Shown here: positions 51,294-64,000 of the stretch, one piece after another
How positions within the stretch are numbered: the first letter of the stretch is position 1
Layout: each line of letters starts with the position of its first letter
Made by a program: the position numbers and the translations under genes
Virus record (IMG/VR): IMGVR_UViG_3300017917_001342
Location: 310,001 to 374,000 of that record
Length of the DNA stretch: 64,000 nucleotides
Reading direction: 5' to 3' (one strand)
The notes under the pieces: generated by a model
What the model was told of the DNA's origin: nothing
Databases searched by the model: none
Seen by the model: only the letters and a program-made list of their open reading frames with translations

Positions 51294-51890
51294 TTAACCG
51301 ACTTGTATACCAACACCAGTGATAGGTGCAACCTGTGGCATGATAGTATTGTCTTGTGTAGCGTTGTCGTAACGTATTGTCATAGTAATCATTACCTGAT
51401 CACTACTTTCATAACTGAAACTATCGTAACCTACTTTTTCTAGATAGCAACCTTCTAGATACCAATTTTCTAATACACCACTGTTACTACCATCCAGTGT
51501 TTCAATCTGTGTAGTGAACTTGTAGTTAATACCTGCTAATGCACTGGTTTGGTCGAAGTGGTTCATTTGCTTTTGCAACTGTGTTGCAACCAATCTACTT
51601 GCACTGCTATTAACATCGTCACGAACTTTGAGTTCAATTGTATCCCATTCCGGTTTACTTGGTAGATACATTACGTTGTTATAGCTGTGTACTTTTGTTG
51701 CAGATGTTGAAATAGATGGTCTACCGCATTCTGCAACTTGCCGTGTCATTTCAATGGCTGCACCAGTAGGGCCAAAGTTTTGCATACTAATTCTAAAGCG
51801 ATATTTCAGCTTAGGCATCAATATGCCAAGACCGCTAGTGCCCGGTACAATTGGTACGCCAAACTTGCTCAGTGTGGGCTGGAACGCCAT
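51294..51890 (-). CDS. gp19: tail tube protein (T4 gp19-like)
   Basis: PKLKYRFR, RP....., KPEWDTIEL.VRDD, ENW.LEGCY, MTIRYD; TATAAATA promoter ~51915-51922 and AAGGAG RBS. Confidence 0.85.
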   Translation of the reverse strand: MAFQPTLSKFGVPIVPGTSGLGILMPKLKYRFRISMQNFGPTGAAIEMTRQVAECGRPSISTSATKVHSYNNVMYLPSKPEWDTIELKVRDDVNSSASRLVATQLQKQMNHFDQTSALAGINYKFTTQIETLDGSNSGVLENWYLEGCYLEKVGYDSFSYESSDQVMITMTIRYDNATQDNTIMPQVAPITGVGIQVG

Positions 51891-51989: not shown

Positions 51990-52757
51990 ATGGAGTCTAA
52001 TATGCAAATCAAAAGAATACCCGACAGTTGGTTACTGTTTATATTTCAAGTCATTGCTCATGTAGGGTTGGTGTTACTTGTTGTTTATGGCGATTGGTAT
52101 CATTGGCTTATGAGTTTTTCAGTTTACTTTGTAACAGGTTGTTTTGGTATGACAATGACATACCACAGACTGTTAAGTCATAAAAGTTGGAATGCACCAA
52201 GTTGGTTTGAAAAATTTGGAACACTTTGTGGCACCTATGGATTAGTAGGCAGCAGTATAGGTTGGGTTGCAATTCACCGTGAGCATCACCATCACACAGA
52301 TAAAGAGCAAGACCCACATAGTCCAAAACACAAAGGTTTTGCATCAGTACAATGGTTAAGCATGTTCGAAAAACCAAACCCAAAATATGCATTGCATTTA
52401 ATTAAATCACCATTTCATTTGAATTTACACAAATACTATTTTGTTATTCACGCTGCTATATTTGTAGTATTGGCATTGATAAACCCAATGCTGTTGTTAT
52501 CGCTATATTTGGCGCCTGCTGCAATATTATGGAACGCAGGTTCATTAATAAACACACTTACACATATGGTTGGATATAGAAATTACGAAACAAGAGATGA
52601 TAGTACTAACATATTATTCTTAGGGTATTTAATGTGGGGTGAAGGCTGGCATAATAACCACCACAATCAACCAACCAATTCAACATTTGGGGAAAAATGG
52701 TGGGAATTTGACATGGGCGACAAATTTATAAAACTGATTGGGAAATCAAACACATGA
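51990..52757 (+). CDS. membrane fatty acid (delta-9 type) desaturase
   Basis: His boxes HRLLSH, HREHHHH and HNNHH; transmembrane segments; start may be the second Met (52002). Confidence 0.93.
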   Translation: MESNMQIKRIPDSWLLFIFQVIAHVGLVLLVVYGDWYHWLMSFSVYFVTGCFGMTMTYHRLLSHKSWNAPSWFEKFGTLCGTYGLVGSSIGWVAIHREHHHHTDKEQDPHSPKHKGFASVQWLSMFEKPNPKYALHLIKSPFHLNLHKYYFVIHAAIFVVLALINPMLLLSLYLAPAAILWNAGSLINTLTHMVGYRNYETRDDSTNILFLGYLMWGEGWHNNHHNQPTNSTFGEKWWEFDMGDKFIKLIGKSNT

Positions 52758-53614
52758 AAATACTAGTAACAGGAAGTGACGGTTTTATAGGAAAACATTA
52801 TTGCTCTCATGCAGAGCGCGATTCAACTGTGCTAAAAGCTGACAAACAATCTGGTATAGATATATCTAAAGACCGATCTATTTTTGACAGATTTGGCAAA
52901 TGCGATGTTGTTTTGCATTTAGCTGCAACCAATGGAACCAAACTGTTCTACGAAACGCCTGCCGACATAACCATTAATGACACACAAGCTACATTGAATT
53001 TAGTTGATTACTATAGAACAACCAATACTAAAATAGTGTTTAGTAGCAGTTGCGAAATTGTCAATGGTGCAGTCGATAGCGGATTATCAGCTGTGCCAAC
53101 CAATGAAAACACTCCAATAGTGTTCAACAACATTGCCAATCCACGATGGAGTTACAGTCTACCAAAGGCATTAGGTGAAAATCTAATAATTAACTCCGGT
53201 GCACCTTGGCTAATAATCAGGTACTTTAATGTCTACGGTCCAGGTCAGCGATATCACTTCCTTGACGAATTCATTTCAAGAGTTGCAGCAGGCGAATATT
53301 ATATAAAAGGCAACGATTATAGAAGCTTCTGTTATGTAGATGATGCTGTTGATATGACACATACCCTGATAAAACATCACCAAGGTTGCATTGTAAATAT
53401 AGGTAAGCCAGAGATGGTATTAATCAGTGATGTTGCTAGACTAATAATGGATTTAATGGGAGTAGATCCAGAGAAACTGAAAATACTACCAGGTGCAGTG
53501 GGCAGTGTATCTAAAAGATGTCCCGATACTACTCTGGTTAAAGAATTAACAGGGTTTACTCAATACACTGATTTGAAATCAGGTCTTAGAAAAACCATAG
53601 AAAGTTTATTATGA
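52754..53614 (+). CDS. NAD-dependent nucleotide-sugar epimerase/dehydratase
   Basis: TGSDGFIG, HLAA, YSLPK (YxxxK), RYFNVYGP. Confidence 0.92.
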   Translation: MKILVTGSDGFIGKHYCSHAERDSTVLKADKQSGIDISKDRSIFDRFGKCDVVLHLAATNGTKLFYETPADITINDTQATLNLVDYYRTTNTKIVFSSSCEIVNGAVDSGLSAVPTNENTPIVFNNIANPRWSYSLPKALGENLIINSGAPWLIIRYFNVYGPGQRYHFLDEFISRVAAGEYYIKGNDYRSFCYVDDAVDMTHTLIKHHQGCIVNIGKPEMVLISDVARLIMDLMGVDPEKLKILPGAVGSVSKRCPDTTLVKELTGFTQYTDLKSGLRKTIESLL

Positions 53615-54408
53615 AAATAGGAATAATAGGTGTAGGGATAGTTGGTAATGCATTAAAATATGGGTTTGAACAATTAGGACATGAAGTTCGTGTTCATGAT
53701 ATAAAATTACCAACAGCTATCACAGACGTGTTAGATACAGAAATTGCATTTATATGTGTACCTAGCCCGTCAACTGCAAACGGCGAATGCGATACAACTA
53801 TTATAGAAAGTGTAATAGACGAATTAAACAGTTACAACTATGCAGGAATAGTTGCAATAAAAACCACAGTTGTACCAGGCTTTACAGAAAGCATTATCAA
53901 ACACTATAATAAATTAATCGTATGTTTTGTTCCCGAATTTTTAAGAGAACGCTGTGCCATTGATGATTTTATAAATCAACACAGTTTATTAGCAGTAGGA
54001 ACACACGACTCTAACGTGTACAATAAAATTGTGCAAGCACATGGATATTTTCCAAAACAAACAGCACAATTAACCCCCACCGAAGCAGAGTTATTAAAAT
54101 ATTTCAACAACGTGTATGCTGCATTGCGTATTTCATTTGCTAATATAATGTACGAAGTTTCGAATAAACTGAATTGCAATTATACTACAATTAAAAATTC
54201 ATACATCATGACGGGAAAAGCTAAAGATCTATATCTAGATGTAAATCCACAATTACGTGGGTATAGTGGTACATGTTTGCCAAAAGACACAAAAGCATTG
54301 AGTGTGTTGATTAAACAATTGGATCTCGATTACGAGTTAATAGAATCAATACACAACGACAATGAAAAATTTGATAAAACTGTATTTCCGGGTATGAGAC
54401 ATGAATAA
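53611..54408 (+). CDS. UDP-glucose/GDP-mannose dehydrogenase family, lacking the C-terminal domain
   Basis: GVGIVG, PEFLRE, KYFNN, GYSGTCLPKD. Confidence 0.9.
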   Translation: MKIGIIGVGIVGNALKYGFEQLGHEVRVHDIKLPTAITDVLDTEIAFICVPSPSTANGECDTTIIESVIDELNSYNYAGIVAIKTTVVPGFTESIIKHYNKLIVCFVPEFLRERCAIDDFINQHSLLAVGTHDSNVYNKIVQAHGYFPKQTAQLTPTEAELLKYFNNVYAALRISFANIMYEVSNKLNCNYTTIKNSYIMTGKAKDLYLDVNPQLRGYSGTCLPKDTKALSVLIKQLDLDYELIESIHNDNEKFDKTVFPGMRHE

Positions 54409-55177
54409 CAGCATCAAAGACTTAATATTGTCGCAATCAACTGCTGTACGTACCAGTGTGCTACCCGAAGTTAACAATTTAATCAGCACAGTTAAACCAG
54501 ATTTCGACAGTGTAAGACCCTACAAAACAGCTATAGTAGATTGGTTAAAACCTGTTGTAGATCTATCAGGATACAGCGTTTATCCAACCAATGGTATTAC
54601 CGAAGGTTTGAATTGGTGGTATAATAGAGAAAAAAGAGCAGTATGGGTTAAGCCGGGTGATTACCAATGGGTAACTACCAGAATGAATGGCGGTCCTGCA
54701 ATTGTCTATCAAAGTTTACCTAGTAGCATAGATGGCAACTACACAGCACTACATACCGACGCTGCAATGGCATTAGACTTAGCCTATGTTGGCAGCACAG
54801 TGCCTATGCGTATAGAGTTGCATCAAAATGTAGATGTAGTGTTTTATAGTCTTAGTAAAGCGTTTGGTGTAAGAAATGTGAGAACTGGATGGATTTTTAC
54901 AAAACAACCAGACCCTGCATTAGATGCACTTACGCATAGTGCAAAATACTATAATTATTTTGCAGTCGATATAGCTGAGCGCATAATAGAGAACTACGAT
55001 ATTGGATATGTGCATAGCCGCCTTAAACACAAACAATTGCAAGTCTGCGACATGTTAGATTTAACTCCTAGTGACAGTGTTTGGTTAGCAACCAGTGAAC
55101 ATGAAGACTATGCAAAATTTAGGCGTAACCAAAACACAGCAAGAATTTGTTTATCAGGAGCATATGAATTATGTTAA
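54401..55177 (+). CDS. PLP-dependent aminotransferase (class I/II-like)
   Basis: DLAY and SLSKAFG...RTGW PLP motifs. Confidence 0.75.
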   Translation: MNNSIKDLILSQSTAVRTSVLPEVNNLISTVKPDFDSVRPYKTAIVDWLKPVVDLSGYSVYPTNGITEGLNWWYNREKRAVWVKPGDYQWVTTRMNGGPAIVYQSLPSSIDGNYTALHTDAAMALDLAYVGSTVPMRIELHQNVDVVFYSLSKAFGVRNVRTGWIFTKQPDPALDALTHSAKYYNYFAVDIAERIIENYDIGYVHSRLKHKQLQVCDMLDLTPSDSVWLATSEHEDYAKFRRNQNTARICLSGAYELC

Positions 55178-55794
55178 AAAAACATCAGTTACCAACAATC
55201 AGTAACTTCAATCTAAAAATAGATCTAGAACGTTTGCAAAAAGAAACTGACAAACTGGCAGAAAAGTTTGTCGATGTTCGAACTGCAAATCCCATGCTAT
55301 GCGACAATCACATGACACTGGTTGAACAGGTCTACGACAATTTCGAACAGATAAATTTAACCACTCCTAGTAAAATACTTCCGTATACAGACAGCGTTAA
55401 AGAAAGACTACGCAGAAAAGAAGAACATTTATATAATGTGCCAACTGAACATTACGAAGGTAGTTACTTCCAAGAGATAATCAGCCAATTAAAAGCACCT
55501 GCAAGCCGTGTACGTATTACTAAACTTGCACCAGGTAAAACTATTCCGTTCCATGTGGATTATGACGTAAACTATGCTGTAAGATGTATATGTCCAATTT
55601 ACAGCGACAGAAACGTAATCAATCTATTTAGAAGAGACGACCAGCTTGAAGCATACACGTTTGAGCCAGGTAATGCATATTTCTTGAATATTGCATATCC
55701 GCATGCTGTTATCAACATGAGCGATAAACCAAGAATTGCACTTATGTTCAGTTTAGATGGTCAAGATGACCTTATGGATTTCGCAATTCAATGA
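55171..55794 (+). CDS. Asp/Asn beta-hydroxylase-like 2OG-Fe(II) dioxygenase
   Basis: RVRITKLAPG..IPFHVD...PHAVIN....RIAL. Confidence 0.85.
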   Translation: MLKKHQLPTISNFNLKIDLERLQKETDKLAEKFVDVRTANPMLCDNHMTLVEQVYDNFEQINLTTPSKILPYTDSVKERLRRKEEHLYNVPTEHYEGSYFQEIISQLKAPASRVRITKLAPGKTIPFHVDYDVNYAVRCICPIYSDRNVINLFRRDDQLEAYTFEPGNAYFLNIAYPHAVINMSDKPRIALMFSLDGQDDLMDFAIQ

Positions 55795-56321
55795 TAAAAG
55801 AAAGTGTTAGCACTGTAGGTAATCAAGCATATCAGTTTGCGCAGTTTAAACAGAATCAGATAAATCTAATCATGTTTATCTGCAATCACTGTCCTTATGT
55901 ATTGTATAGAATGCCTGCTATTTCACAGTTAGTCGACGACTACAAGGATGCTATAAACATTGTTGCAATCAACAGCAATGATAGTAGTCCATCTACCTAT
56001 GATAGTCATCCTGAAGACGCCCCAGAGTACATGCCGGCATTTAAAATAAAACACAATCTCAATTGCGAGTATATTTTTGATGCAGACCAATCTCTAGCCA
56101 AACAATACAATATACAATGTACACCAGAATTTGTTTTAACTGATAAAAACGGTATCATTGTCTATCACGGTGAATTAGATCCCAGCAGGAAAACTAATCA
56201 ATTAAAATCCACTGGCAGCAGTCTACGTCATGCAATTGAATTAACCGTAGTCGGACAAAAAATCACATGGCAACCTGCTGCTAGCTTTGGTTGCAGTATC
56301 AAATGGAAAGAAACACTATGA
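55791..56321 (+). CDS. thioredoxin-fold redoxin (AhpC/TSA-like)
   Basis: MFICNHCPYV, INSND, CTPEF, FGCSIKW. Confidence 0.9.
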   Translation: MIKESVSTVGNQAYQFAQFKQNQINLIMFICNHCPYVLYRMPAISQLVDDYKDAINIVAINSNDSSPSTYDSHPEDAPEYMPAFKIKHNLNCEYIFDADQSLAKQYNIQCTPEFVLTDKNGIIVYHGELDPSRKTNQLKSTGSSLRHAIELTVVGQKITWQPAASFGCSIKWKETL

Positions 56322-56683
56322 AATATTGCCAAATAATGAATCCTGATACTTTTACAGATCACAGAGGTTCCATATTCAGTTTTTTTCCAGACGTTGATAT
56401 AAAAGAATACAACCTCATGGTAACATTCAAAGGCGACGAAAGAGGTTATCATTACCATCCGCATTTCTATGAATATATAATGATTGTTGACGGCGAATGC
56501 TTATTTAAGGAACATCACAACGGTGAAACAAACGAGATTCTTCTTAAAACAGGCAGTAGTGTACGAATCCCTGCGGGTATTGCACATGCATTTGTAGCGA
56601 TAACAGATCTAAAATTTGTCAGCATGCTAACACAGGGATGGAACGATAGTAATCCACCTATTGTAAAAGTAGATTTCAAATGA
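56318..56683 (+). CDS. cupin (sugar epimerase/isomerase-like)
   Basis: DHRG, RGYHYHPHFYE, IPAGIAHAF; start probably MKYCQ at 56318. Confidence 0.8.
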   Translation: MKYCQIMNPDTFTDHRGSIFSFFPDVDIKEYNLMVTFKGDERGYHYHPHFYEYIMIVDGECLFKEHHNGETNEILLKTGSSVRIPAGIAHAFVAITDLKFVSMLTQGWNDSNPPIVKVDFK

Positions 56684-57351
56684 GCAACGTAGAAACCGAT
56701 CCAGTGTTGGAGATAACAGTGTTTGAAAATGTATATGTAAAACCATACGATAAATCTTACAAAACGCAAATAGACGAGTTTTTAGAACTTGCAATTAACG
56801 AAGGCAACGACTCGTACAAAAGCAGCAATTTTCATCCGGACAATATTGACGGTCAAACGTGGATGACATTTGTTGATGGCGACCTGGCCAGTATCAGTGC
56901 AGTAGAACGTAGTCATTATACTGGTGACCCTGACATAGCCGGGCGAGTTTGTAGGTACCACATACTGAAAAAATACAGACATAGCAATGCCGGATTTAGA
57001 ATGTTAAACGACCAAGTACAATGGGCTAAAGAAGTCGGTCTAAAAACACTGTACTGGACTCATAATGTAAACAACAAAGCACTGAACGCAATGTATCAAC
57101 ATAAACGCACAATGCCATTCAGAGGTGAAAGTGTACCGTATTTTATGACTGATACATATAAAGCATTTGTTTTACAGCCCGATATGATATTCAAAGTAAG
57201 TCCAAAAAGTGATTTCTTACAATACGTTTATGCTAATATGTTAGTCGAAGGATTTGTCTGGAGACCAGAGCATCCGACTATTATCTATTATGAACACAAC
57301 GGCGAAATAACAGAAACTATAAAATCCGCAGTACTAAGCCTAGGGTCGTAA
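56680..57351 (+). CDS. GNAT-like acetyltransferase
   Basis: R....KKYRHSNAG (motif A-like), N.KALNAMY. Confidence 0.6.
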   Translation: MSNVETDPVLEITVFENVYVKPYDKSYKTQIDEFLELAINEGNDSYKSSNFHPDNIDGQTWMTFVDGDLASISAVERSHYTGDPDIAGRVCRYHILKKYRHSNAGFRMLNDQVQWAKEVGLKTLYWTHNVNNKALNAMYQHKRTMPFRGESVPYFMTDTYKAFVLQPDMIFKVSPKSDFLQYVYANMLVEGFVWRPEHPTIIYYEHNGEITETIKSAVLSLGS

Positions 57352-57858
57352 TACCAATTCAGTTATCTCATATTGATTGTTGTGTATTGCATCTAACAGA
57401 AATTTAGATGCATATGCATGCGATATCTTTCCTGCACCATCACCTAAATATCCAGGTTTAAATATCATTAATTTACAACCATGTCGATCGTGGCTGTTAA
57501 CAAGTTGATATGTTGCAACGTCAAGTGCTTTTTTAACCGTGCTATATAGGCAAGGTCTTAAACGCCACTCTGCTGCATTGCTAGCCATACTACCTACAGT
57601 AACTATGAGTTTTTTACTGTTCTTCCATTCATCGTACAGTTCATAAAGAAGATCTAACTGCCCATATCTGTCATACGCATTGTTTATAAAAACGTCACAA
57701 TGTGTCACAGTGTCAATCAAACGTTTCCTATCATCGCGATTGGTTATATCAAATCCGTTTGATCTGCTGAACCCAATCACATCAATATCTTGTTCAATTG
57801 AATAGTTGTAAATGCTCTTACCTAGTCCAGATGTGTGTCCAGTTATTGCCAACTTCAT
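57340..57858 (-). CDS. short-chain dehydrogenase/reductase
   Basis: TGHTSGLG, FINNA, YSTVK. Confidence 0.85.
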   Translation of the reverse strand: MKLAITGHTSGLGKSIYNYSIEQDIDVIGFSRSNGFDITNRDDRKRLIDTVTHCDVFINNAYDRYGQLDLLYELYDEWKNSKKLIVTVGSMASNAAEWRLRPCLYSTVKKALDVATYQLVNSHDRHGCKLMIFKPGYLGDGAGKISHAYASKFLLDAIHNNQYEITELVLRP

Positions 57859-58952
57859 TTTATTTCTTTCATATAATTGTGTATATCTAGTACAAATTTT
57901 GCGTTAACAGATCTGTCCAACGACGTTTGCTTATTCAGTTGCAGTGTGTTTTTATCTTTATAGATCCAAGAGTAGGGATCGTCTATAGATTGCAATAATG
58001 AATTAACACGCTTTAATTCATTGAGCAAACCGTGCAATCTATCTGCATCATTTTTTATAAAATCAAATGATAAATCGAAATAGTTATCGTACAGTTTAAA
58101 TCCTAAATCTTTTAAGTAATGATTAACACCGGGCTGTCCCCATATTATAATAGGTCGATTGAACAACAGATACTTGAAAGTCTTTTCAGTGATATAAAAA
58201 CCAATGTCATCTAATATAGTATCTTGCACTAATATAAAACTGTAATTGATTGCAGATGTGCAGATATCTTCTGTCCATTGCACTGGCATGTCTGTGTCAA
58301 AATCTGTTCTATCAATTTCATAATTCTTTAAAAACACGCTGTCAGATTTGCATTCTATATTAAATCTAGTCAGATGATCTTTTAATACGTGCGGCTCTAC
58401 AATGCTTTGACTTATAGCTGCATTTAAATCATTCTCGATAATAAGGTAATTCATTGCGTTTCTATGAGCCCGAGGATTTCTAGAAAATGTGATAAATCCT
58501 GGTACTACTTTATCGGGATCGGTTCCTATTCTATCTTTGAACATGTGATTTATTTCAACAAACGTTGCAACAGGAAATGTTGCTATTTTATTTTTGAAAT
58601 CGGTAGTCAAAAACCAATTGTTGTAGGTTGATATTTCTCTATCAAGATTTGCAGTTAACAAAATTACATTTGGTTCTGGTATGTCATACTTTATACAGTC
58701 CATATGTATGCTATAATACAAATGTCCAATATCAAACGATTCCCAAGTATAGTCTAGCACTATAAAATGATCTTTTGCACGTTGTAATTCGTCTGCTGTA
58801 AGACTATCAAATATAGGCATATGTATTAACGACTGTGCACCACTGATAATATCCCAATGCGGATTTACTGATTTAGTAACAATTTCTTTTGAGAAATTAT
58901 ATTCGACACCCCAGGGTTTGTTATAGTTCATCCCATCTACTAACAAAGTCAT
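57855..58952 (-). CDS. hypothetical protein, possible GT-B (GT10-like) glycosyltransferase
   Basis: YITEKTFK...RPIIIWG motif. Confidence 0.45.
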   Translation of the reverse strand: MTLLVDGMNYNKPWGVEYNFSKEIVTKSVNPHWDIISGAQSLIHMPIFDSLTADELQRAKDHFIVLDYTWESFDIGHLYYSIHMDCIKYDIPEPNVILLTANLDREISTYNNWFLTTDFKNKIATFPVATFVEINHMFKDRIGTDPDKVVPGFITFSRNPRAHRNAMNYLIIENDLNAAISQSIVEPHVLKDHLTRFNIECKSDSVFLKNYEIDRTDFDTDMPVQWTEDICTSAINYSFILVQDTILDDIGFYITEKTFKYLLFNRPIIIWGQPGVNHYLKDLGFKLYDNYFDLSFDFIKNDADRLHGLLNELKRVNSLLQSIDDPYSWIYKDKNTLQLNKQTSLDRSVNAKFVLDIHNYMKEIK

Positions 58953-59671
58953 TATAACAATTCCTCAAATATATAAAATTCTTTTGACAACACAGGTTTT
59001 ACAAAATCGTTAACATCTAAAATTACCGAATCACCGTTTAACCATTTTACTGCTAAGTTTGCTAGTATTTCATTATTTTCTTTTGTCATATGGCATTTTC
59101 TCATATCATATTCAAAAATAGGATATTCTATATTCCATGCTGTGTTTTCCATAGCAAACACATCAGTCAATGTATTGCCAACTATATTTTCGAAACTGTT
59201 ATTGAAATTGGGAACTAGCATTATATCCGGTCTCAGCTTTTTACAGTAATCTACTAGACTATTGTGTATTAAGTTTACATGATCTTCTTGATATATGTAA
59301 ATGTAATAATCTAATACGCTGTTTAATTCTGTTAACCATTTTTCTTTTTTTGCTCTATCATACCATAATTTACTGTATTCGTAATTAACGAAATGCGGAG
59401 TTGGTTGGTTGTCGCTAGGAAAGCCCATTGTTACACGACCAGGATGCGTAACTAATAAAATTACCTTGTCGTACAAATGATGCGTGGACTTTAACAGGTC
59501 TGCACTGTAAACAAGACTAGAACTAAATGCAGAATAGTTTGTTACAGCGTACTTACTAGCTAGTATTTCTGTCCAATCTAAACCTATGTAACTGAGATAT
59601 TGTTTACCAGATTCTGAAACATTGAACGCAAACCCAGATCCGAAACTGTCACCGTATATACCGATTTTCAT
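58952..59671 (-). CDS. SGNH/GDSL-like protein
   Basis: IGIYGDSF; C-term CH.T...N. Confidence 0.5.
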   Translation of the reverse strand: MKIGIYGDSFGSGFAFNVSESGKQYLSYIGLDWTEILASKYAVTNYSAFSSSLVYSADLLKSTHHLYDKVILLVTHPGRVTMGFPSDNQPTPHFVNYEYSKLWYDRAKKEKWLTELNSVLDYYIYIYQEDHVNLIHNSLVDYCKKLRPDIMLVPNFNNSFENIVGNTLTDVFAMENTAWNIEYPIFEYDMRKCHMTKENNEILANLAVKWLNGDSVILDVNDFVKPVLSKEFYIFEELL

Positions 59672-60450
59672 TTTAGGTTAGACTCAATTATCTGCGCAGC
59701 AGTGCGATGACTCAGTGTTCCGTAGTGTATTAGGTCTCTAGCACTGTCTAATTTATATAGCTGCTGTATGCCTAGCACTTTAGCTGTTTCTTCAAAAAAA
59801 CTAACCTGTGCATATCTGGTTCGTGTTTTCCAAAATCCTTCGCACGCCATACCAGTAAAATACATCTGTGCTTGCGAGTTAGTGTCATTGCCGTTCCAGA
59901 TTTCAAATAGAGATTTGAGGCGTTTATCAAAATTGTCCCAGCGACCACCACTCCAGTATCCAACCCTTGATACTTTGTTTTCCTCATAATATAGGAATCT
60001 GCCAATGTCGCTCCATACTTGCACAACTGCATAGGGAGTTGGATACCATTTGTCTAATAATAAACTGTTATGCCAACTAAACATCGGACTTGTGCCAGAT
60101 TGACCAATGTTTATAACTGGCCTATCTGTTAATCTAGACAAGTGATAGCAAAGTGTTTCTGTTTCAGCTAATCCTTCTCCAAACACATGCGAACACCCAA
60201 ATACTACTATGCTTTCTTTCCAATCAACTGTGTCCCATTCCGGTGCTCTATAATAGTTTTGATTGAGGTTATACTTCACTTCCTTTGTTCTATAGGGCCA
60301 ATCAGCTGGTTGATTTTTTAGGTTTTCATAATAGGCCGCTTTTTCTTCTACTGATAAAAAATCAGGTAGGAGTTTACCATATTTTAATTCGTTCGGTAAT
60401 ACCAAAGGGAACGGCCCAGGTAAAAAAGCGTTTGGTTCTAAATAGTTCAT
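59668..60450 (-). CDS. SGNH/GDSL-like protein
   Basis: VFGCSHVFG, NIGQSGTS, ARDLIHYG. Confidence 0.55.
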   Translation of the reverse strand: MNYLEPNAFLPGPFPLVLPNELKYGKLLPDFLSVEEKAAYYENLKNQPADWPYRTKEVKYNLNQNYYRAPEWDTVDWKESIVVFGCSHVFGEGLAETETLCYHLSRLTDRPVINIGQSGTSPMFSWHNSLLLDKWYPTPYAVVQVWSDIGRFLYYEENKVSRVGYWSGGRWDNFDKRLKSLFEIWNGNDTNSQAQMYFTGMACEGFWKTRTRYAQVSFFEETAKVLGIQQLYKLDSARDLIHYGTLSHRTAAQIIESNLK

Positions 60451-61037
60451 TTACGTTTTGGTACAGAAACTAAACTAGGATCTTTTAATTCAGCGATGTC
60501 AATTGGCATAGCAATTGTCATTATTGCAACTAATTTATTAGACATATTGACAAAGTTATGCCAAACAGTATTTGATGCAAACGTAGGTTTAGTAATCTCA
60601 AATTGAGTTGTAGCATTATCATAGGTAAAAACACCTGTCCCTAAAATAGGAAATACCAGTGTTGTTCCGCCAAAGTTTCCTTTATCAATGTGCTCTTGTA
60701 AATGCGCACCAGGTACTAACAACAAAAATGCAGTACCCATATCATCAATATTAACAGTCAACGAATTATCTCTAATCATTTGAAATTTAATATCAGCAAT
60801 GATATTTTTATATTCTATATGTTCTGGATATGTACTCCATGAAAGTTTTTTGTCTTTTTTAGAAAAAGAAACAGCTAAGTTAAAAAGTGACGCATTTTGA
60901 TCATTGCTTTCATATGTCGATGTTTCAAAATCACTAGACATTAATAGGTTAATAAATCTATCGCTTTGCAGTGTACTTAAAAACTCATCGTATCTAGAAG
61001 TTGTGCAGGGATAGCGTGTTGGTACATATTCGTTCAT
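60447..61037 (-). CDS. 2OG-Fe(II) dioxygenase-like (DSBH) protein
   Basis: LQEHID...VWHNFVN. Confidence 0.6.
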   Translation of the reverse strand: MNEYVPTRYPCTTSRYDEFLSTLQSDRFINLLMSSDFETSTYESNDQNASLFNLAVSFSKKDKKLSWSTYPEHIEYKNIIADIKFQMIRDNSLTVNIDDMGTAFLLLVPGAHLQEHIDKGNFGGTTLVFPILGTGVFTYDNATTQFEITKPTFASNTVWHNFVNMSNKLVAIMTIAMPIDIAELKDPSLVSVPKRK

Positions 61038-61588
61038 TTGATTAACAGACCTCGTGTATAAAGATCTTTTAATACGTCATATGTGTAAGGCTCCATGAAA
61101 CAAACACTAAGGTTTATTCTAGGACTGCTGCTTTTTCTATTGTCTACACCGTGTGGTACATTTCTAAACAAAATGGGTTCTGTATAAAGCACACTGTCTA
61201 TGATATGCCCATTTGAGTAATCATGAAACTTTTGTTGCTTGCCAACTTGACCTTCCCATTCTGGTATATGCCAAAAGTCTAAAGTATGTTGCTCATAGCT
61301 GTCTGTACATGGTATTAGTATTGCAGCACTTCTGCCATTATCAACATGCGGAATTAGCAATTCACCTGCTCTACAGGCTATTAAAATACCCATGTAACTC
61401 CAAATTGGTAACAGTTGATCTTTTAACCAATCAGGCTCGTATTTTTTGTAATACTGCACATACCCGTGATTCTCATGTTCGGGTGTAATCTCAGACCATC
61501 CAGTCCTATCGTTTATTACAGTTTGCAAATGTGCCTTGTCTATTTTTAATTCAGGGAGTTTGCAATATAGTTCCATATTATTCTCCAA
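61034..61588 (-). CDS. 2OG-Fe(II) dioxygenase-like protein
   Basis: IPHVD...PHGVDN...PRINLS. Confidence 0.7.
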   Translation of the reverse strand: MENNMELYCKLPELKIDKAHLQTVINDRTGWSEITPEHENHGYVQYYKKYEPDWLKDQLLPIWSYMGILIACRAGELLIPHVDNGRSAAILIPCTDSYEQHTLDFWHIPEWEGQVGKQQKFHDYSNGHIIDSVLYTEPILFRNVPHGVDNRKSSSPRINLSVCFMEPYTYDVLKDLYTRGLLIK

Positions 61589-62345
61589 TAGAAATGCAGC
61601 GTATATTACACGGACTGTCTAATATATACTTAACTGCATTTACTATGTCTCTACTTTTAACATTTTGAGTTATTTTTACAGTAGTAAATTCGTCTGACGG
61701 ATGATCGCCTATGTAAATGACAAACTTGTTTTTATGCTGTTTTGCAAAAAATATGTTATCGGTTATTAGTATGTCACAGGCATCTGCATTTGAATGTGTG
61801 TTAAAGTATGCTTTTAATACAGCATTGTCAAAGGTCTGACATATGTTATAGTCTTGTGTCCATTTCGTAACAAGCGTATCTGTTTTTTCCATGTTGACAA
61901 TTTCGTCATAGGATTTGTCAAAATGAAATAACAGATTATATCTAGGTTTATCTGAATAGTTAATACCATTGTGCCAAGTCTTGGCATTTGTTACAACTGG
62001 ATTGCTGTAATAGTAATCAACTTCTTCATCATTTACTTTAAATCGTATCAAATGAGGAGTAGTATCAATTGGTACAATTAGTGTGCAACCTCTAGTAAAA
62101 TCAGTGTGCCAGCCAGTTTCATGACCAGGTGGTACGTAGCTAAAACTATAGGTGGTAGAATCTAACAGACGATTTTTAATACGTATAGCTTCTATGCTAA
62201 CTGGAAACACAATATCTCTATGTGTGCTGAAAAAGGTTTTACCTCTATCAGCAGTGTATTGCGGCCAATGTTTTATATCAGAAATGGTCTCGTATAAAAA
62301 TTCTCTGTCATAATCAAGAGTTATCGGATAGATGTAGTCATCCAT
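61578..62345 (-). CDS. 2OG-Fe(II) dioxygenase-like protein with a C-terminal extension
   Basis: GWHTD...WHNGIN...PRYNL. Confidence 0.7.
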   Translation of the reverse strand: MDDYIYPITLDYDREFLYETISDIKHWPQYTADRGKTFFSTHRDIVFPVSIEAIRIKNRLLDSTTYSFSYVPPGHETGWHTDFTRGCTLIVPIDTTPHLIRFKVNDEEVDYYYSNPVVTNAKTWHNGINYSDKPRYNLLFHFDKSYDEIVNMEKTDTLVTKWTQDYNICQTFDNAVLKAYFNTHSNADACDILITDNIFFAKQHKNKFVIYIGDHPSDEFTTVKITQNVKSRDIVNAVKYILDSPCNIRCISIGE

Positions 62346-62928
62346 GTTTCATATTCTTTGTTAATGTTATATCTTCAACGCATTCCGGTGCATCGATTAT
62401 CCATTTGATAACAGATGCAACATACTCTGTATTTAATTTAGGTTCATCTGGGTGCAATTTGTCAACGTATGGTGTATGCATATGTCCGAGGCTCATATAT
62501 GTACACTTTATGTTAGGCGTTATAGTTGTTCTGTTATGATTGATAGTTTGACACAGTTGCTTTAATGCAATTTTTTCACTGCTGTAGCTTATGTATTTTA
62601 ACCAAGGCTGTGCAGTATTAATGTGATCACTAATGCTGCCAATGCATATAACATGTCCAGACTTGTTGCTTTGTTCCCAATCAACATAGAGTTTGTGCAA
62701 CAATCTAACTTGACTATAGTTGTTCATTTTTTCAGTATAGCAATTTAAAATCACCACGTCATAATGACATGCAATGTGACAGAATTTATCCATACCTTCG
62801 TCAGTAGATAAATCATAGCCATTTGATCTACTAGCAAAACTGCTTTTTAGCAGTGTATTAATTCCAGCAGCAAGGCCGTACGATGGATTACCCGTTGTTA
62901 GAATATGTGTTACTGGTTGTCCGGCCAT
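62338..62928 (-). CDS. short-chain dehydrogenase/reductase
   Basis: TTGNPSYGLA, VILN, YSSEK. Confidence 0.75.
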   Translation of the reverse strand: MAGQPVTHILTTGNPSYGLAAGINTLLKSSFASRSNGYDLSTDEGMDKFCHIACHYDVVILNCYTEKMNNYSQVRLLHKLYVDWEQSNKSGHVICIGSISDHINTAQPWLKYISYSSEKIALKQLCQTINHNRTTITPNIKCTYMSLGHMHTPYVDKLHPDEPKLNTEYVASVIKWIIDAPECVEDITLTKNMKHG

Positions 62929-63359
62929 ATTGATAATCCTAACCTTTGACTAGAAATTTCACTTATATCATGTATTATGTCAACTTGTATACGATGCCAC
63001 GTATGCAGTGGTGCAGTTGCTTCGTAAACTATTTCGGTAGAGTCGTCATTGTACCAGCGAGTTCTCACATTGTCGCCACCAGTTAAAAACAAATAGTTGT
63101 AACAAAATGTTCTACCAACATCGCGATGAGGCGTTAGCTGCACACCGATTAATTGATAGTTTGCTTTGATTTTGAAGCTAAAATGCTGTTGCAAAAAATC
63201 ATGCAACTCGTCGCTTATAGCATGTGTAAAGTACCAATGATCGCCCGACGGATCATCGGAAAACATGTTTTTACCTTTGCGTATAATAGCAGGATCTGTT
63301 ATTGCAAGACCTTCTGGTATTTTTGGTAAATTTGGTTCTATTTGATAATATGGTAACAT
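62910..63359 (-). CDS. 2OG-Fe(II) dioxygenase-like protein
   Basis: TPHRD...IIHDI...RLGLS. Confidence 0.65.
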   Translation of the reverse strand: MLPYYQIEPNLPKIPEGLAITDPAIIRKGKNMFSDDPSGDHWYFTHAISDELHDFLQQHFSFKIKANYQLIGVQLTPHRDVGRTFCYNYLFLTGGDNVRTRWYNDDSTEIVYEATAPLHTWHRIQVDIIHDISEISSQRLGLSIWPDNQ

Positions 63360-63362
63360 TTA

Positions 63363-63824
63363 TTATCCTTGTAGTAAACGTTTTCTAGCATACCAACTAA
63401 GAGGCAAATTCAATGTTTTATAATCTTCGCCGGTTACTTTGCCTCTGCACTTGGGTGATCCGCACTTGCAAACTTCTATCGGATTCTTTTTGGTTAAGAA
63501 AAAAGTTCCGTAGTCTACTGTGATGAATTCGCCTTGTTGTATATCGCGCAATGCTCTAAATACAATTTGCCCATCTATATAGCAATTTGGATCACAACTG
63601 TGATTAACATATGCTTCGTATTCACTGCCAGCAGGCAAATCTAATACAAAGTCTTTATCAATCAGCAATCCTTTATACCAAGTGGTTTCTTGGTTGTTTA
63701 TTGCTATGCCGCCTGCAACAAATATCACATCGTCTTTATTAATTACAGAAGTTGCACATCTACACAAACCATGTACTGCACTTTCTTTTACTTCGGTATT
63801 TTTATTAATCCAAAAATAATGCAT
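63363..63824 (-). CDS. SET-domain lysine methyltransferase with post-SET
   Basis: YVNHSCDPNC, ALRDI..GEFITVDYG, CKCGSPKCRG; start probably MHYF at 63824. Confidence 0.92.
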   Translation of the reverse strand: MHYFWINKNTEVKESAVHGLCRCATSVINKDDVIFVAGGIAINNQETTWYKGLLIDKDFVLDLPAGSEYEAYVNHSCDPNCYIDGQIVFRALRDIQQGEFITVDYGTFFLTKKNPIEVCKCGSPKCRGKVTGEDYKTLNLPLSWYARKRLLQG

Positions 63825-64000
63825 TAAATTTAGGATCCTCAAAGTTTGCTAATACTAGTATGTGGTAACGTGCATCGCCTGCTGTATTATTTACAGCATG
63901 GTTATGTTGTGTGTTTATTATCCATGCTTCATTAAAACCATAATGTTGAACATGCAATGTTTTATCCATGTATACTAACATAGATGCATGTTCAGATGTA
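63805..64000 (-). CDS. C-terminus of another Asp/Asn beta-hydroxylase-like 2OG-Fe(II) dioxygenase (5'-truncated)
   Basis: Manual translation: ...AWIINTQHNHAVNNTAGDARYHILV...LFLD*. Confidence 0.65.
   Translation of the reverse strand, partial: TSEHASMLVYMDKTLHVQHYGFNEAWIINTQHNHAVNNTAGDARYHILVLANFEDPKFNALFLD

What the first reader, a model, noticed from the sequence alone, without database searches (positions are those of the whole stretch)
55171..64000. Expanded array of divergent 2OG-Fe(II) dioxygenases
Seen: HxD...H triads in 55171-55794, 60447-61037, 61034-61588, 61578-62345 and 62910-63359, plus the distal His/Arg half in 63805-64000. Five show the distal Arg expected for 2OG binding; 60447-61037 appears to lack it. 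The sequences are very divergent from one another. Inference: substrate-specialised hydroxylases, possibly acting on the repeat-rich fibre proteins in this window or on tRNA/DNA bases.
Basis: partly seen in the sequence, partly recalled or inferred. Interest (0 to 1): 0.6.

Follow-up and report, generated by a model that had tools for sequence, protein, structure and literature searches.

The report
Megaphage array of small Fe/2OG oxygenases
A 519-kb freshwater phage carries eight very different small iron/2-oxoglutarate-type oxygenase genes (six of them in this window) in one conserved accessory island with radical-SAM and sugar enzymes; the enzyme class is real, the kind of thing is already known from cyanophages and SAR11 phages, and the substrate remains unknown.

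Summary
All six ORFs are real, conserved genes with a double-stranded beta-helix (2OG-oxygenase) fold. A, D and F pass Pfam PF05118 (Asp/Asn beta-hydroxylase). C and E have no Pfam or PHROG model, but they fold with pLDDT 95 and match only 2OG oxygenases (Z 10-12). B matches viral PF05118 models (TM 0.64-0.68). B lacks the 2OG-binding Arg, as do all 18 aligned homologues. F has no HxD. The bare motif is no commoner than chance genome-wide, so the proof comes from profiles and folds.

The array runs past the window: G and H follow, and G is a full-length homologue of the caprazamycin beta-hydroxylase Cpz10 (E 2.5e-19). All eight lie in one ~26-kb island between the tail-tube and tail-sheath genes of a T4-related megaphage. 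The island also holds five radical-SAM enzymes, methyltransferases, PP-loop ATPases, a SET protein, short SDR-like proteins, nucleotide-sugar enzymes and a fatty-acid desaturase.

Each paralogue has a one-to-one orthologue in related metagenomic phages, so the array is old and specialised. The most likely role is stepwise tailoring of a small-molecule, glycan or peptide product. Fibre or DNA targets are not supported. This is a new variant of a known phage theme.

The parts
55171..55794 (+). A: 207-aa soluble PF05118-type Fe/2OG oxygenase (HVD...H...R)
   Evidence: Pfam PF05118 33.6 bits against a cut-off of 22.6. 68% identical to Asp_Arg_Hydrox protein Mosig_00072 of Pelagibacter phage Mosig. 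The E-family HMM hits it at 5.8e-5. No TM segment.
60447..61037 (-). B: 196-aa AspH-fold protein with the metal triad (PGAHLQEHID...WHN) but no 2OG-anchoring Arg
   Evidence: No Pfam or PHROG hit. 21 homologues. H116/D118/H160 are invariant and the Arg position is V/H/T in all 19 aligned sequences. hhalign against the A/D/F/G/H profile gives E 0.0023 with motifs in register. The ESM Atlas model matches viral PF05118 clusters at TM 0.64-0.68.
61034..61576 (-). C: 180-aa Pfam-orphan Fe/2OG oxygenase (HVD...H...R)
   Evidence: 47 metagenomic homologues with H77/D79/H142/R153 invariant. AF2 pLDDT 95.2. VIA-align top matches are all 2OG oxygenases: Z 10.9 to proline 3-hydroxylase and Cpz10, 10.1 to AspH. 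hhalign to the E family gives probability 85%, E 6e-6.
61578..62345 (-). D: 255-aa PF05118-type oxygenase (HTD...H...R) with a ~100-aa C-terminal extension of unknown role
   Evidence: Pfam PF05118 23.2 bits against a cut-off of 22.6. Genome scan. Orthologues at 54-55% identity in L006 and L007.
62910..63359 (-). E: 149-aa minimal Pfam-orphan Fe/2OG oxygenase (HRD...H...R)
   Evidence: 398 representative clusters at E<=0.001. D80/H130/R139 invariant in 74 sequences. No Pfam family. AF2 pLDDT 94.8. VIA Z 11.7 to Cpz10 and 11.1 to AspH.
63805..64000 (-). F: C-terminal 64 codons of a 256-aa PF05118-type gene that continues to window coordinate 64575. It has the distal His and Arg but no HxD (WHSHNYYE instead).
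   Evidence: Pfam PF05118 27.7 bits on the full length. Open frame and GTG start. Orthologue alignment.
62338..62928 (-). Short SDR-like protein between D and E, overlapping both; one of three paralogues in the island
   Evidence: Weak adh_short hit. Paralogues at 57340-57858 and genome 377398-377961 share the N-terminal ITG.P.YGL motif. Its position is conserved in relatives.
63363..63842 (-). SET-domain methyltransferase embedded in the array
   Evidence: Pfam SET 47 bits. Conserved at the same position in L005-L009.
51990..57351 (+). Plus-strand module around A: fatty-acid desaturase, NAD epimerase/dehydratase, UDP-glucose dehydrogenase-like, aminotransferase-like, A, redoxin, cupin_2 (sugar isomerase-like), GNAT
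   Evidence: Pfam. The desaturase, aminotransferase-like protein, A and GNAT have homologues (33-68% identity) in the Mosig island.
57340..60450 (-). Distal end of the minus-strand gene string: short SDR-like protein, 365-aa unknown, two GDSL-motif proteins
   Evidence: no family for three of them.
51294..51890 (-). gp19-like tail-tube gene, the left boundary of the island
   Evidence: Weak Phage_T4_gp19 hit. The right boundary is the tail sheath at genome 387629-391663.

Best explanation
The six ORFs, plus G and H immediately beyond the window end, are soluble single-domain non-haem iron oxygenases. They belong to the AspH/Cpz10 (PF05118) branch of the 2OG-oxygenase superfamily and to two or three sister families that have no Pfam model.

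They sit in one ~26-kb accessory island between the tail-tube and tail-sheath genes of a 519-kb freshwater T4-related megaphage.

In A, C, D, E, G and H the mechanism is inferred from family chemistry, not assayed here. Fe(II) is held by HxD...H. The C5 carboxylate of 2OG is anchored by the Arg ten residues after the distal His. O2 activation gives succinate, CO2 and an Fe(IV)=O species that hydroxylates a C-H bond.

Each paralogue is individually conserved across related phages. The array is co-oriented and overlaps start-to-stop with SDR-like, SET, PP-loop, methyltransferase and five radical-SAM genes. The most likely role is therefore a set of position-specific tailoring steps on one elaborate product. 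That product could be a small molecule, a modified sugar or glycan, or a peptide made by the island during infection. I judge a small-molecule or glycan product likelier than a virion-protein target.

B keeps the metal site but cannot bind 2OG in the canonical way. It is probably a 2OG-independent or alternative-cosubstrate iron enzyme. F has a non-canonical proximal ligand set.
For: Fold and family:
- Pfam PF05118 is above cut-off for A, D and F.
- AF2 models of C and E (pLDDT 95) match 2OG oxygenases almost exclusively, at Z 10-12.
- B's Atlas model matches viral PF05118 clusters.
- Profile links: E-C at E 6e-6, E-A at 5.8e-5, B to the A/D profile at about 2e-3.
- Catalytic residues are invariant in deep family alignments.

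Nearest characterised relative:
- G matches Cpz10 at E 2.5e-19 over the full length. The A/D/F/G/H profile matches at E 5e-22.
- G, H and F share Cpz10's R-x-H motif.
- In Cpz10 the ligands are His115/Asp117/His160, and the R170A mutant loses 2OG and iron (PMC9814697).

One island only:
- No other 2OG family is found anywhere in the genome.

Context:
- Searches give the neighbouring enzyme families.

Age and specialisation:
- One-to-one orthologues in conserved order appear in five related loci, each with 6-7 members.

Solubility:
- The proteins are acidic and have no TM segment.
Against: - There is no biochemical, transcript or proteome evidence. No RNA run holds the locus.
- The substrate is inferred only from neighbours and from one characterised homologue at roughly 30-40% identity to G. 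A is only marginally similar to Cpz10 (E 0.11) and D not at all.
- The SET domain and the SPASM/twitch radical-SAM enzymes are equally typical of protein or peptide modification.
- A strong hairpin terminator separates the island from the sheath gene, so its timing of expression is unknown.
- Metal-site geometry in the models could not be inspected.
Confidence: 0.6

Rival explanations
1. Protein or peptide post-translational modification. The oxygenases hydroxylate residues of virion proteins (for example the collagen-like GPT/GAT-repeat fibres encoded elsewhere in the genome) or of a ribosomal peptide, together with the SET methyltransferase and the radical-SAM enzymes.
For: - PF05118 is named for a protein Asp/Asn hydroxylase.
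- A SET-domain gene lies inside the array.
- The island holds B12-type, twitch-type and SPASM-type radical-SAM genes and a nitroreductase-like gene, all common in RiPP clusters.
- The island lies inside the tail module. In Mosig the equivalent island abuts the tail-fibre genes.
- Eight collagen-like proteins have Pro at the X position in 37% of triplets.
Against: - No P4H-type family (PF13640) is present.
- No precursor-like small ORF was seen, and the only apparent gap is part of F.
- The collagen-like genes are more than 100 kb away.
- The closest characterised homologue acts on a small molecule.
- The nucleotide-sugar, aminotransferase-like, GNAT and SDR neighbours fit metabolite tailoring better.
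Confidence: 0.25
2. Host-envelope lipid remodelling of the LpxO/OlsC type. The PF05118 members 2-hydroxylate acyl chains of lipid A or aminolipids, acting with the desaturase, GNAT and UDP-glucose dehydrogenase genes.
For: - By my own knowledge, the characterised bacterial PF05118 enzymes are the lipid hydroxylases LpxO and OlsC.
- A sits in a module with a fatty-acid desaturase, a GNAT, a redoxin and UDPG dehydrogenase. That module is shared with a SAR11 phage.
Against: - All eight proteins are small, acidic and lack any hydrophobic anchor: the maximum 19-residue hydropathy is <=1.26, against 2.55 for the desaturase.
- This could explain A at most, not the B-H string that is embedded among radical-SAM genes.
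Confidence: 0.08
3. Nucleic-acid base modification or repair (DNA or tRNA).
For: - Two PP-loop ATPases give weak partial QueC hits, and radical-SAM genes are adjacent.
- Phage DNA hypermodification clusters can look like this (own knowledge).
Against: - The genome has no AlkB, TET/JBP or TGT/DpdA family.
- The QueC hits cover only the C-terminal Zn-binding part of the model and score at or below the curated cut-off: 24.1 bits against 22 for one protein, 19 against 22 for the other.
- The fold neighbours are not specifically nucleic-acid oxygenases.
Confidence: 0.04
4. Metabolic drain or sensor. The multiple oxygenases mainly modulate host 2-oxoglutarate/succinate levels, as proposed for cyanomyoviruses.
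For: This hypothesis was put forward for the cyanophage 2OG-Fe(II) expansions (PMC3037559).
Against: - Eight anciently diverged paralogues, each kept as a one-to-one orthologue with its own distinct sequence, argue for distinct prime substrates rather than a shared bulk function.
- One member cannot bind 2OG canonically.
- Nothing indicates a cyanobacterial host. The nearest TerL relatives infect Sinorhizobium, Agrobacterium and Pseudomonas.
Confidence: 0.03

Closest known systems
Cpz10, the Fe/2OG beta-hydroxylase of caprazamycin biosynthesis (PDB 7V4F/7V4P; PMC9814697)
   Same: - Small (~180 aa) single-domain DSBH enzyme.
- HxD...H with the Arg at distal-His+10, and an R-x-H motif.
- G aligns over the full length at E 2.5e-19, and the A/D/F/G/H profile at E 5e-22.
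- It is the best or tied-best fold match for C and E, at Z 10.9 and 11.7.
   Different: - Cpz10 sits in an actinomycete liponucleoside cluster, and no such cluster context was shown here.
- Within the window itself only A shows even marginal sequence similarity to it (E 0.11). B, C, D and E show none.
- The substrate here is unknown.
Pfam PF05118 Asp_Arg_Hydrox (AspH, LpxO, OlsC; phage 'Asp_Arg_Hydrox domain' proteins such as Mosig_00072 and Mosig_00081)
   Same: - A, D and F score above the gathering threshold.
- B keeps the family's PGxHxxxHxD signature.
- A is 68% identical to the Mosig protein, and the surrounding desaturase/aminotransferase-like/GNAT module is shared.
- This hydroxylase is reported as a core gene of pelagimyophages (PMC7029224).
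   Different: - There are no TPR, EGF-binding or membrane-anchor parts.
- G and H fall below the threshold, and B, C and E are not detected at all.
- Eight copies stand in one operon-like string in place of the three annotated in Mosig (two in its island, one elsewhere).
Expanded 2OG-Fe(II) oxygenase sets of T4-like cyanomyoviruses (1-5 per genome; 24 in S-SCSM1)
   Same: Many mutually divergent small 2OG oxygenases in one phage genome, concentrated in accessory regions, with function untested (PMC3037559, PMC9602691). Fold searches link C and E to these viral proteins.
   Different: - The cyanophage sets belong to PF13640, PF13661, PF13759 and PF05721, none of which is present here.
- Here all copies are of the PF05118 type or its Pfam-less sisters.
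- They form a single syntenic array embedded among radical-SAM genes in a 519-kb non-cyanophage.
Host recognition cluster / hypervariable island in the structural module of pelagi- and cyanomyophages
   Same: A large accessory island inside the tail gene module. It carries LPS and sugar genes and radical-SAM cassettes, and shows gradual gene-cassette turnover (PMC7029224). Here members are present or absent between relatives: E is missing in L006 and B in L007.
   Different: - Here the island lies between the tail-tube and sheath genes, not between VrlC and gp14.
- No tail-fibre genes were identified inside it.
- The phage's terminase is closest to those of Phosso, Atu_ph07 and PA5oct.

Membership tests
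Fe(II)/2OG-dependent oxygenase superfamily | Double-stranded beta-helix (jelly-roll) catalytic fold | tested here: met
   - C and E: AF2 pLDDT ~95, with top VIA matches at Z 10-12 that are 2OG oxygenases.
- B: Atlas model TM 0.64-0.68 to PF05118 clusters.
- A, D, F: Pfam PF05118 above cut-off.
Fe(II)/2OG-dependent oxygenase superfamily | HxD/E...H facial triad for Fe(II) | tested here: met
   Present and conserved in A, B, C, D, E, G and H. Not met in F, which has WHSHNYYE (HxH, or His...Glu) conserved in its orthologues.
Fe(II)/2OG-dependent oxygenase superfamily | Basic residue (Arg or Lys) anchoring the 2OG C5 carboxylate | tested here: met
   The Arg at distal-His+9/10 is present in A, C, D, E, F, G and H and invariant in the C and E families. 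Not met in B: the position is V/H/T in 19 of 19 sequences, and the family has no invariant basic residue. B should not be filed as a canonical 2OG-dependent enzyme.
Fe(II)/2OG-dependent oxygenase superfamily | 2OG-dependent turnover (succinate and CO2 formation) | not testable with these tools
   Needs purified protein.
Pfam PF05118 Asp_Arg_Hydrox | Whole-protein score at or above the gathering threshold (22.6 bits) | tested here: met
   A 33.6, D 23.2 and F 27.7-28.2 bits are met. G 18.6 and H 15.8 bits are below the threshold. B, C and E have no hit. Membership therefore holds for three of the eight; the rest are sister families linked by profile or fold.
Cpz10-type beta-hydroxylases | Full-length sequence homology to Cpz10, with HxD, the distal His and the R-x-H motif | tested here: met
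   Met for G (E 2.5e-19 over residues 9-165) and for the A/D/F/G/H profile (E 5e-22). H is inferred from 51% identity to G. Inconclusive for A (E 0.11) and not met for D.
Cpz10-type beta-hydroxylases | Liponucleoside biosynthetic context (UMP dioxygenase, transaldolase and so on) | not tested
   The island's enzymes were named only at Pfam/NCBIfam level. None was compared with Cpz or Mur proteins.
Collagen/prolyl 4-hydroxylases (PF13640, P4Hc) | Match to the P4H-type 2OG-FeII_Oxy_3 model | tested here: not met
   No match in the whole genome at E<=1. Only 1 of 74 E-family members gives a weak hit, E 0.0027.
Nucleic-acid 2OG oxygenases (AlkB PF13532; TET/JBP PF12851) | Match to the family model | tested here: not met
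   No match in the genome at E<=0.1.
LpxO/OlsC lipid 2-hydroxylases | Membrane association or a hydrophobic anchor, with the PF05118 domain | tested here: not met
   No 19-residue window exceeds 1.26 Kyte-Doolittle in any of A-H, against 2.55 for the desaturase control. Whether a lipid substrate is used was not testable.

The most novel reading that the evidence does not exclude
The ~26-kb island is a phage-borne biosynthetic gene cluster. Its eight or nine Fe/2OG-type oxygenases, five radical-SAM enzymes (one B12-dependent, two twitch-type), methyltransferases, PP-loop ATPases, aminotransferase-like proteins and SDRs would build a heavily oxidised and methylated natural product or unusual glycan during infection. 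The product could be nucleoside- or aminoglycoside-like, or RiPP-like.

The island would also include two unprecedented active-site variants of the AspH/Cpz10 fold: an Arg-less, 2OG-independent member (B) and an HxH member (F).
Probability: 0.2. Interest if true: 0.8.

Novelty: new variant of a known kind. Interest (0 to 1): 0.45.

Why it matters
Multi-copy 2OG oxygenases are among the most common unexplained accessory genes of large aquatic phages, and none has a demonstrated substrate.

This locus offers a compact test case that is conserved across lineages:
- eight anciently diverged paralogues in fixed order;
- one clear homologue of a structurally and biochemically characterised enzyme (Cpz10);
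- three virus-only families that Pfam and PHROGs do not cover;
- two natural active-site variants.

Working out the product would show whether megaphages run multi-step oxidative tailoring pathways, and on what. It would also give names to several hundred metagenomic protein clusters.

Tried and rejected
- Megablast of the region and tblastn of C, D and E against 50,697 phage records found nothing. Only A and G hit, both in Pelagibacter phage Mosig.
- PHROGs has no meaningful family for any of the six; A's only hit (phrog_201, E 0.004) is weak and unrelated. PADLOC has none either.
- Profiles of the B, C and E families found no solved structure by sequence.
- hhalign of C against the A/D/F/G/H profile was not significant: probability 1%, with only the HxD region aligned. 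C is linked through E and through its fold instead.
- The bare-motif regex test showed no genome-wide enrichment, so I rejected the motif as evidence.
- A possible ninth member (genome 380153-380884, HVD...H...K) could not be confirmed by hhalign, PDB or Pfam.
- A search for a precursor-peptide ORF in the only apparent gap failed, because the gap is the N-terminal half of F.
- sigma-70-like promoter scans were at shuffle level.
- No RNA run holds the locus. Read laying and complex prediction were not used, because no claim here depends on them.

Full report
**What the sequence is**

The window is bases 310001-374000 of a 518,643-bp IMG/VR virus record with direct terminal repeats. It is a tailed phage.
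- It has a T4-type large terminase, a gp19-like tail tube, GroEL, class I ribonucleotide reductase and DnaB.
- A 1344-aa tail sheath lies just past the window.
- The terminase is closest to those of Sinorhizobium phage Phosso (53%), Agrobacterium phage Atu_ph07 (51%) and Pseudomonas phage PA5oct (49%).
- Near-identical DNA occurs in pond, freshwater, aquatic and rhizosphere metagenomes from several studies. No RNA run holds it.

**Checking the observation**

The six ORFs are present as described. I label them as follows.

| Label | Window coordinates | Strand | Length |
|---|---|---|---|
| A | 55171-55794 | + | 207 aa |
| B | 60447-61037 | - | 196 aa |
| C | 61034-61576 | - | 180 aa |
| D | 61578-62345 | - | 255 aa |
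| E | 62910-63359 | - | 149 aa |
| F | 63805 onward | - | 256 aa |

C's start at the ATG (61576) fits its homologues. F is a 256-aa GTG-start gene that ends at window coordinate 64575, so only its last 64 codons are in the window.

A bare HxD...H...R pattern is worthless as evidence.
- It occurs in 29 of 582 ORFs of this genome, against 29.8 +/- 5 in shuffled proteins.
- It is only mildly enriched in the island: 7 of 34 ORFs against 2.9 +/- 1.7.

Each ORF therefore had to be verified independently.

**Verification**

- **A, D and F.** All three pass the Pfam gathering threshold of PF05118, Asp/Asn beta-hydroxylase: 33.6, 23.2 and 27.7 bits against 22.6.
- **C.** It has no Pfam or PHROG hit, but it has 47 metagenomic homologues in which H77, D79, H142 and R153 are invariant. 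Its AlphaFold model (pLDDT 95.2) matches 2OG oxygenases almost exclusively. Examples are proline 3-hydroxylase (Z 10.9, rmsd 2.9 over 139 residues), Cpz10 (10.9), ALKBH6 (10.8) and AspH (10.1).
- **E.** It has only three close homologues by word search. A profile search finds 398 representative clusters.
  - In 74 diverse members D80, H130 and R139 are invariant, and H78 is present in more than 90%.
  - Pfam does not cover the family.
  - The model (pLDDT 94.8) matches Cpz10 at Z 11.7 and AspH at Z 11.1.
  - Profile comparison links E to C (probability 85%, E 6e-6, motifs in register). The E-family HMM finds A in the genome's own ORF set at 5.8e-5.
- **B.** It keeps the PF05118 signature PG-x-H-x-x-x-H-x-D and the distal W-H-N. 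It aligns to the A/D/F/G/H profile in register (E 0.0023). Its ESM Atlas model matches viral PF05118 clusters at TM 0.64-0.68.
- **B's missing Arg.** The position is Val, His or Thr in 19 of 19 sequences, and there is no invariant basic residue anywhere. In the homologous enzyme Cpz10 the equivalent R170A mutant loses 2OG and iron (PMC9814697). B is therefore unlikely to use 2OG in the canonical way, although selection clearly maintains its metal ligands.
- **F's proximal motif.** It lacks HxD and has a conserved W-H-S-H-N-Y-Y-E instead. Which residue is the second ligand is unresolved.

**The array is larger than reported**

Two more members, G and H, follow F directly on the same strand.
- G is at genome 374538-375107 (189 aa) and H at 375104-375652 (182 aa). 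They are 51% identical to each other.
- They are BLAST-related to A.
- G is a full-length homologue of Cpz10 (E 2.5e-19). The A/D/F/G/H profile hits Cpz10 at 5e-22.
- A ninth candidate (genome 380153-380884, HVD...H...K) could not be confirmed.
- No other 2OG family (PF13640, PF13759, PF13661, PF05721, PF03171, PF13532, PF12851) is found anywhere in the genome. The island therefore holds the phage's whole complement.

**Context**

The eight genes lie in a ~26-kb island between the tail-tube gene (window 51294-51890) and the tail-sheath gene (genome 387629-391663).

The plus-strand module runs in this order:
1. fatty-acid desaturase
2. NAD epimerase
3. UDP-glucose dehydrogenase-like protein
4. 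aminotransferase-like protein
5. A
6. redoxin
7. cupin_2
8. GNAT

The minus-strand string consists of mostly overlapping genes, in this order:
1. twitch/SPASM radical SAM
2. nitroreductase-like protein
3. radical SAM
4. methyltransferase
5. second aminotransferase-like protein
6. methyltransferase-like protein
7. twitch radical SAM
8. 243-aa unknown
9. B12 radical SAM
10. PP-loop ATPase
11. SDR-like protein
12. radical SAM
13. PP-loop ATPase
14. H, G, F
15. SET
16. E
17. SDR-like protein
18. D, C, B
19. two GDSL-motif proteins
20. 365-aa unknown
21. SDR-like protein

A strong hairpin terminator separates the sheath gene from the string.

All eight oxygenases are acidic and lack hydrophobic anchors. 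None matches an anti-phage defence model.

**Conservation**

Related metagenomic phage contigs of 61-217 kb carry the same string in the same order, with 6-7 members within 10 kb of the C orthologue.
- Each paralogue has its own orthologue at 44-74% identity, whereas paralogues share at most 30%.
- The array is therefore ancient and subfunctionalised, not a recent amplification.
- Cassette-like gain and loss occurs: E is absent in L006 and B in L007, and L007 has an extra member.

A is 68% identical to an Asp_Arg_Hydrox protein of Pelagibacter phage Mosig. Mosig's island next to its tail fibres also holds a desaturase, an aminotransferase, a peroxiredoxin, a GNAT, a nitroreductase and three radical-SAM genes.

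**Relation to the literature**

- Multiple divergent 2OG-Fe(II) oxygenases are a known feature of T4-like cyanomyoviruses. The usual range is 1-5 per genome, with 24 in S-SCSM1. Their function is untested and a 2OG/nitrogen-status hypothesis has been proposed (PMC3037559, PMC9602691).
- Pelagimyophages have a hypervariable 'host recognition cluster' in the structural module, with sugar genes and radical-SAM cassettes. The Asp/Asn beta-hydroxylase is one of their core genes (PMC7029224).

The present locus is a variant of that theme. It uses a different 2OG subfamily (PF05118/Cpz10-like, plus Pfam-less sisters). It forms a single operon-like array interleaved with radical-SAM, SET and SDR genes. 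It lies in a 519-kb freshwater phage whose closest isolated relatives by terminase infect Sinorhizobium, Agrobacterium and Pseudomonas, not cyanobacteria or SAR11.

**Mechanism**

Shown here: the fold, the ligands, the Arg, the conservation and the synteny.

Inferred from family chemistry: Fe(II)/2OG/O2 gives a ferryl species that hydroxylates the substrate, for A, C, D, E, G and H.

Inferred from context: a shared multi-step tailoring pathway. I favour a small-molecule or glycan product, for three reasons:
- the only characterised close homologue acts on an aminoacyl-nucleoside;
- the neighbours are nucleotide-sugar, aminotransferase-like, GNAT, SDR and methyltransferase enzymes;
- no peptide precursor was found.

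Protein or peptide modification remains a serious rival because of the SET gene, the SPASM/B12 radical-SAM genes, the position inside the tail module, and the eight collagen-like GPT/GAT-repeat proteins elsewhere in the genome.

DNA or tRNA targets and a pure 2OG-drain role are unlikely, for the reasons given under the rival explanations.

**Verdict**

The class assignment is solid. The novelty is moderate: a new variant of a known phage theme, with two unusual active-site variants and three unmodelled virus-only families.

Noticed in passing
L002:2186-3300 (genome 374538-375652), just past the window end: Two further tandem oxygenase genes, G and H, 51% identical to each other. G is a full-length homologue of the caprazamycin beta-hydroxylase Cpz10 (E 2.5e-19). 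The array therefore has eight members, not six.
   Followed up: yes
L004:1649-13523 (genome 375649-387523): The rest of the island holds five radical-SAM genes (one B12-binding; two twitch-domain NF033640 above cut-off, at 246 and 367 bits). It also holds two PP-loop ATPases, two methyltransferases, a nitroreductase-like gene and a second aminotransferase-like gene, and ends at a 1344-aa tail sheath.
   Followed up: partly
L004:6153-6884 (genome 380153-380884): A 243-aa protein with HVD ... NLHSTGKLVGKWK, that is, Lys where the Arg would be. It is a possible ninth, very divergent DSBH member. hhalign, Pfam and PDB searches were inconclusive.
   Followed up: partly
window 63363-63842 (-): A SET-domain (lysine methyltransferase-type) gene sits inside the oxygenase string and is conserved at that position in related phages. 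This is unusual for a bacteriophage.
   Followed up: partly
window 57340-57858 (-), 62338-62928 (-); genome 377398-377961 (-): Three paralogous truncated SDR-like proteins (172-196 aa, N-terminal ITG.P.YGL motif) are interleaved with the oxygenases. They could be hydroxylase/dehydrogenase pairs.
   Followed up: no
window 58952-59671 (-) and 59668-60450 (-): Two adjacent proteins without any family hit carry GDSL-like motifs near the N-terminus (GDSFGSG; FGCSHVFGEG). They may be SGNH-type esterases or acyltransferases.
   Followed up: no
window 56291-56683 (+): A 130-aa cupin_2 protein with weak sugar-nucleotide isomerase/epimerase hits (dTDP_sugar_isom, FdtA). It is a jelly-roll protein but not a 2OG oxygenase. 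It overlaps the end of the redoxin gene.
   Followed up: partly
window 12841-15330 (-): An 829-aa protein built of about two dozen ~30-residue repeats (consensus like TN.G.GYT..P.V.I) with no Pfam hit. It is not collagen-like.
   Followed up: partly
genome 16840-20802, 114416-116845, 246445-251232, 481667-484763, 498724-511402 (outside the window): Eight collagen-like proteins (up to 2634 aa) with G-P-T/G-A-T triplets: Pro at X in 37% and Thr at Y in 62% of 728 triplets. They resemble BclA-type glycosylated fibres.
   Followed up: partly
L004:13597-13625: A perfect 12-bp-stem hairpin flanked by A and T runs (a bidirectional terminator shape) lies in the 105-bp gap between the tail-sheath gene and the first radical-SAM gene of the island.
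   Followed up: no
window 51990-57351 versus L010 (Pelagibacter phage Mosig 42716-67315): A desaturase / aminotransferase-like / GNAT / Asp_Arg_Hydrox module is shared (33-68% amino-acid identity) between this freshwater megaphage and a marine SAR11 myophage. The two phages have very different genome sizes, which suggests the cassette is exchanged between them.
   Followed up: partly
window 45105-47675 (-): An 856-aa protein in the one GC-rich patch of the window (46% GC). It is low-complexity and rich in Ala, Thr, Gly and Pro, has internal duplications and a Cys-rich C-terminal part, and has no family hit. It lies next to the terminase gene.
   Followed up: no
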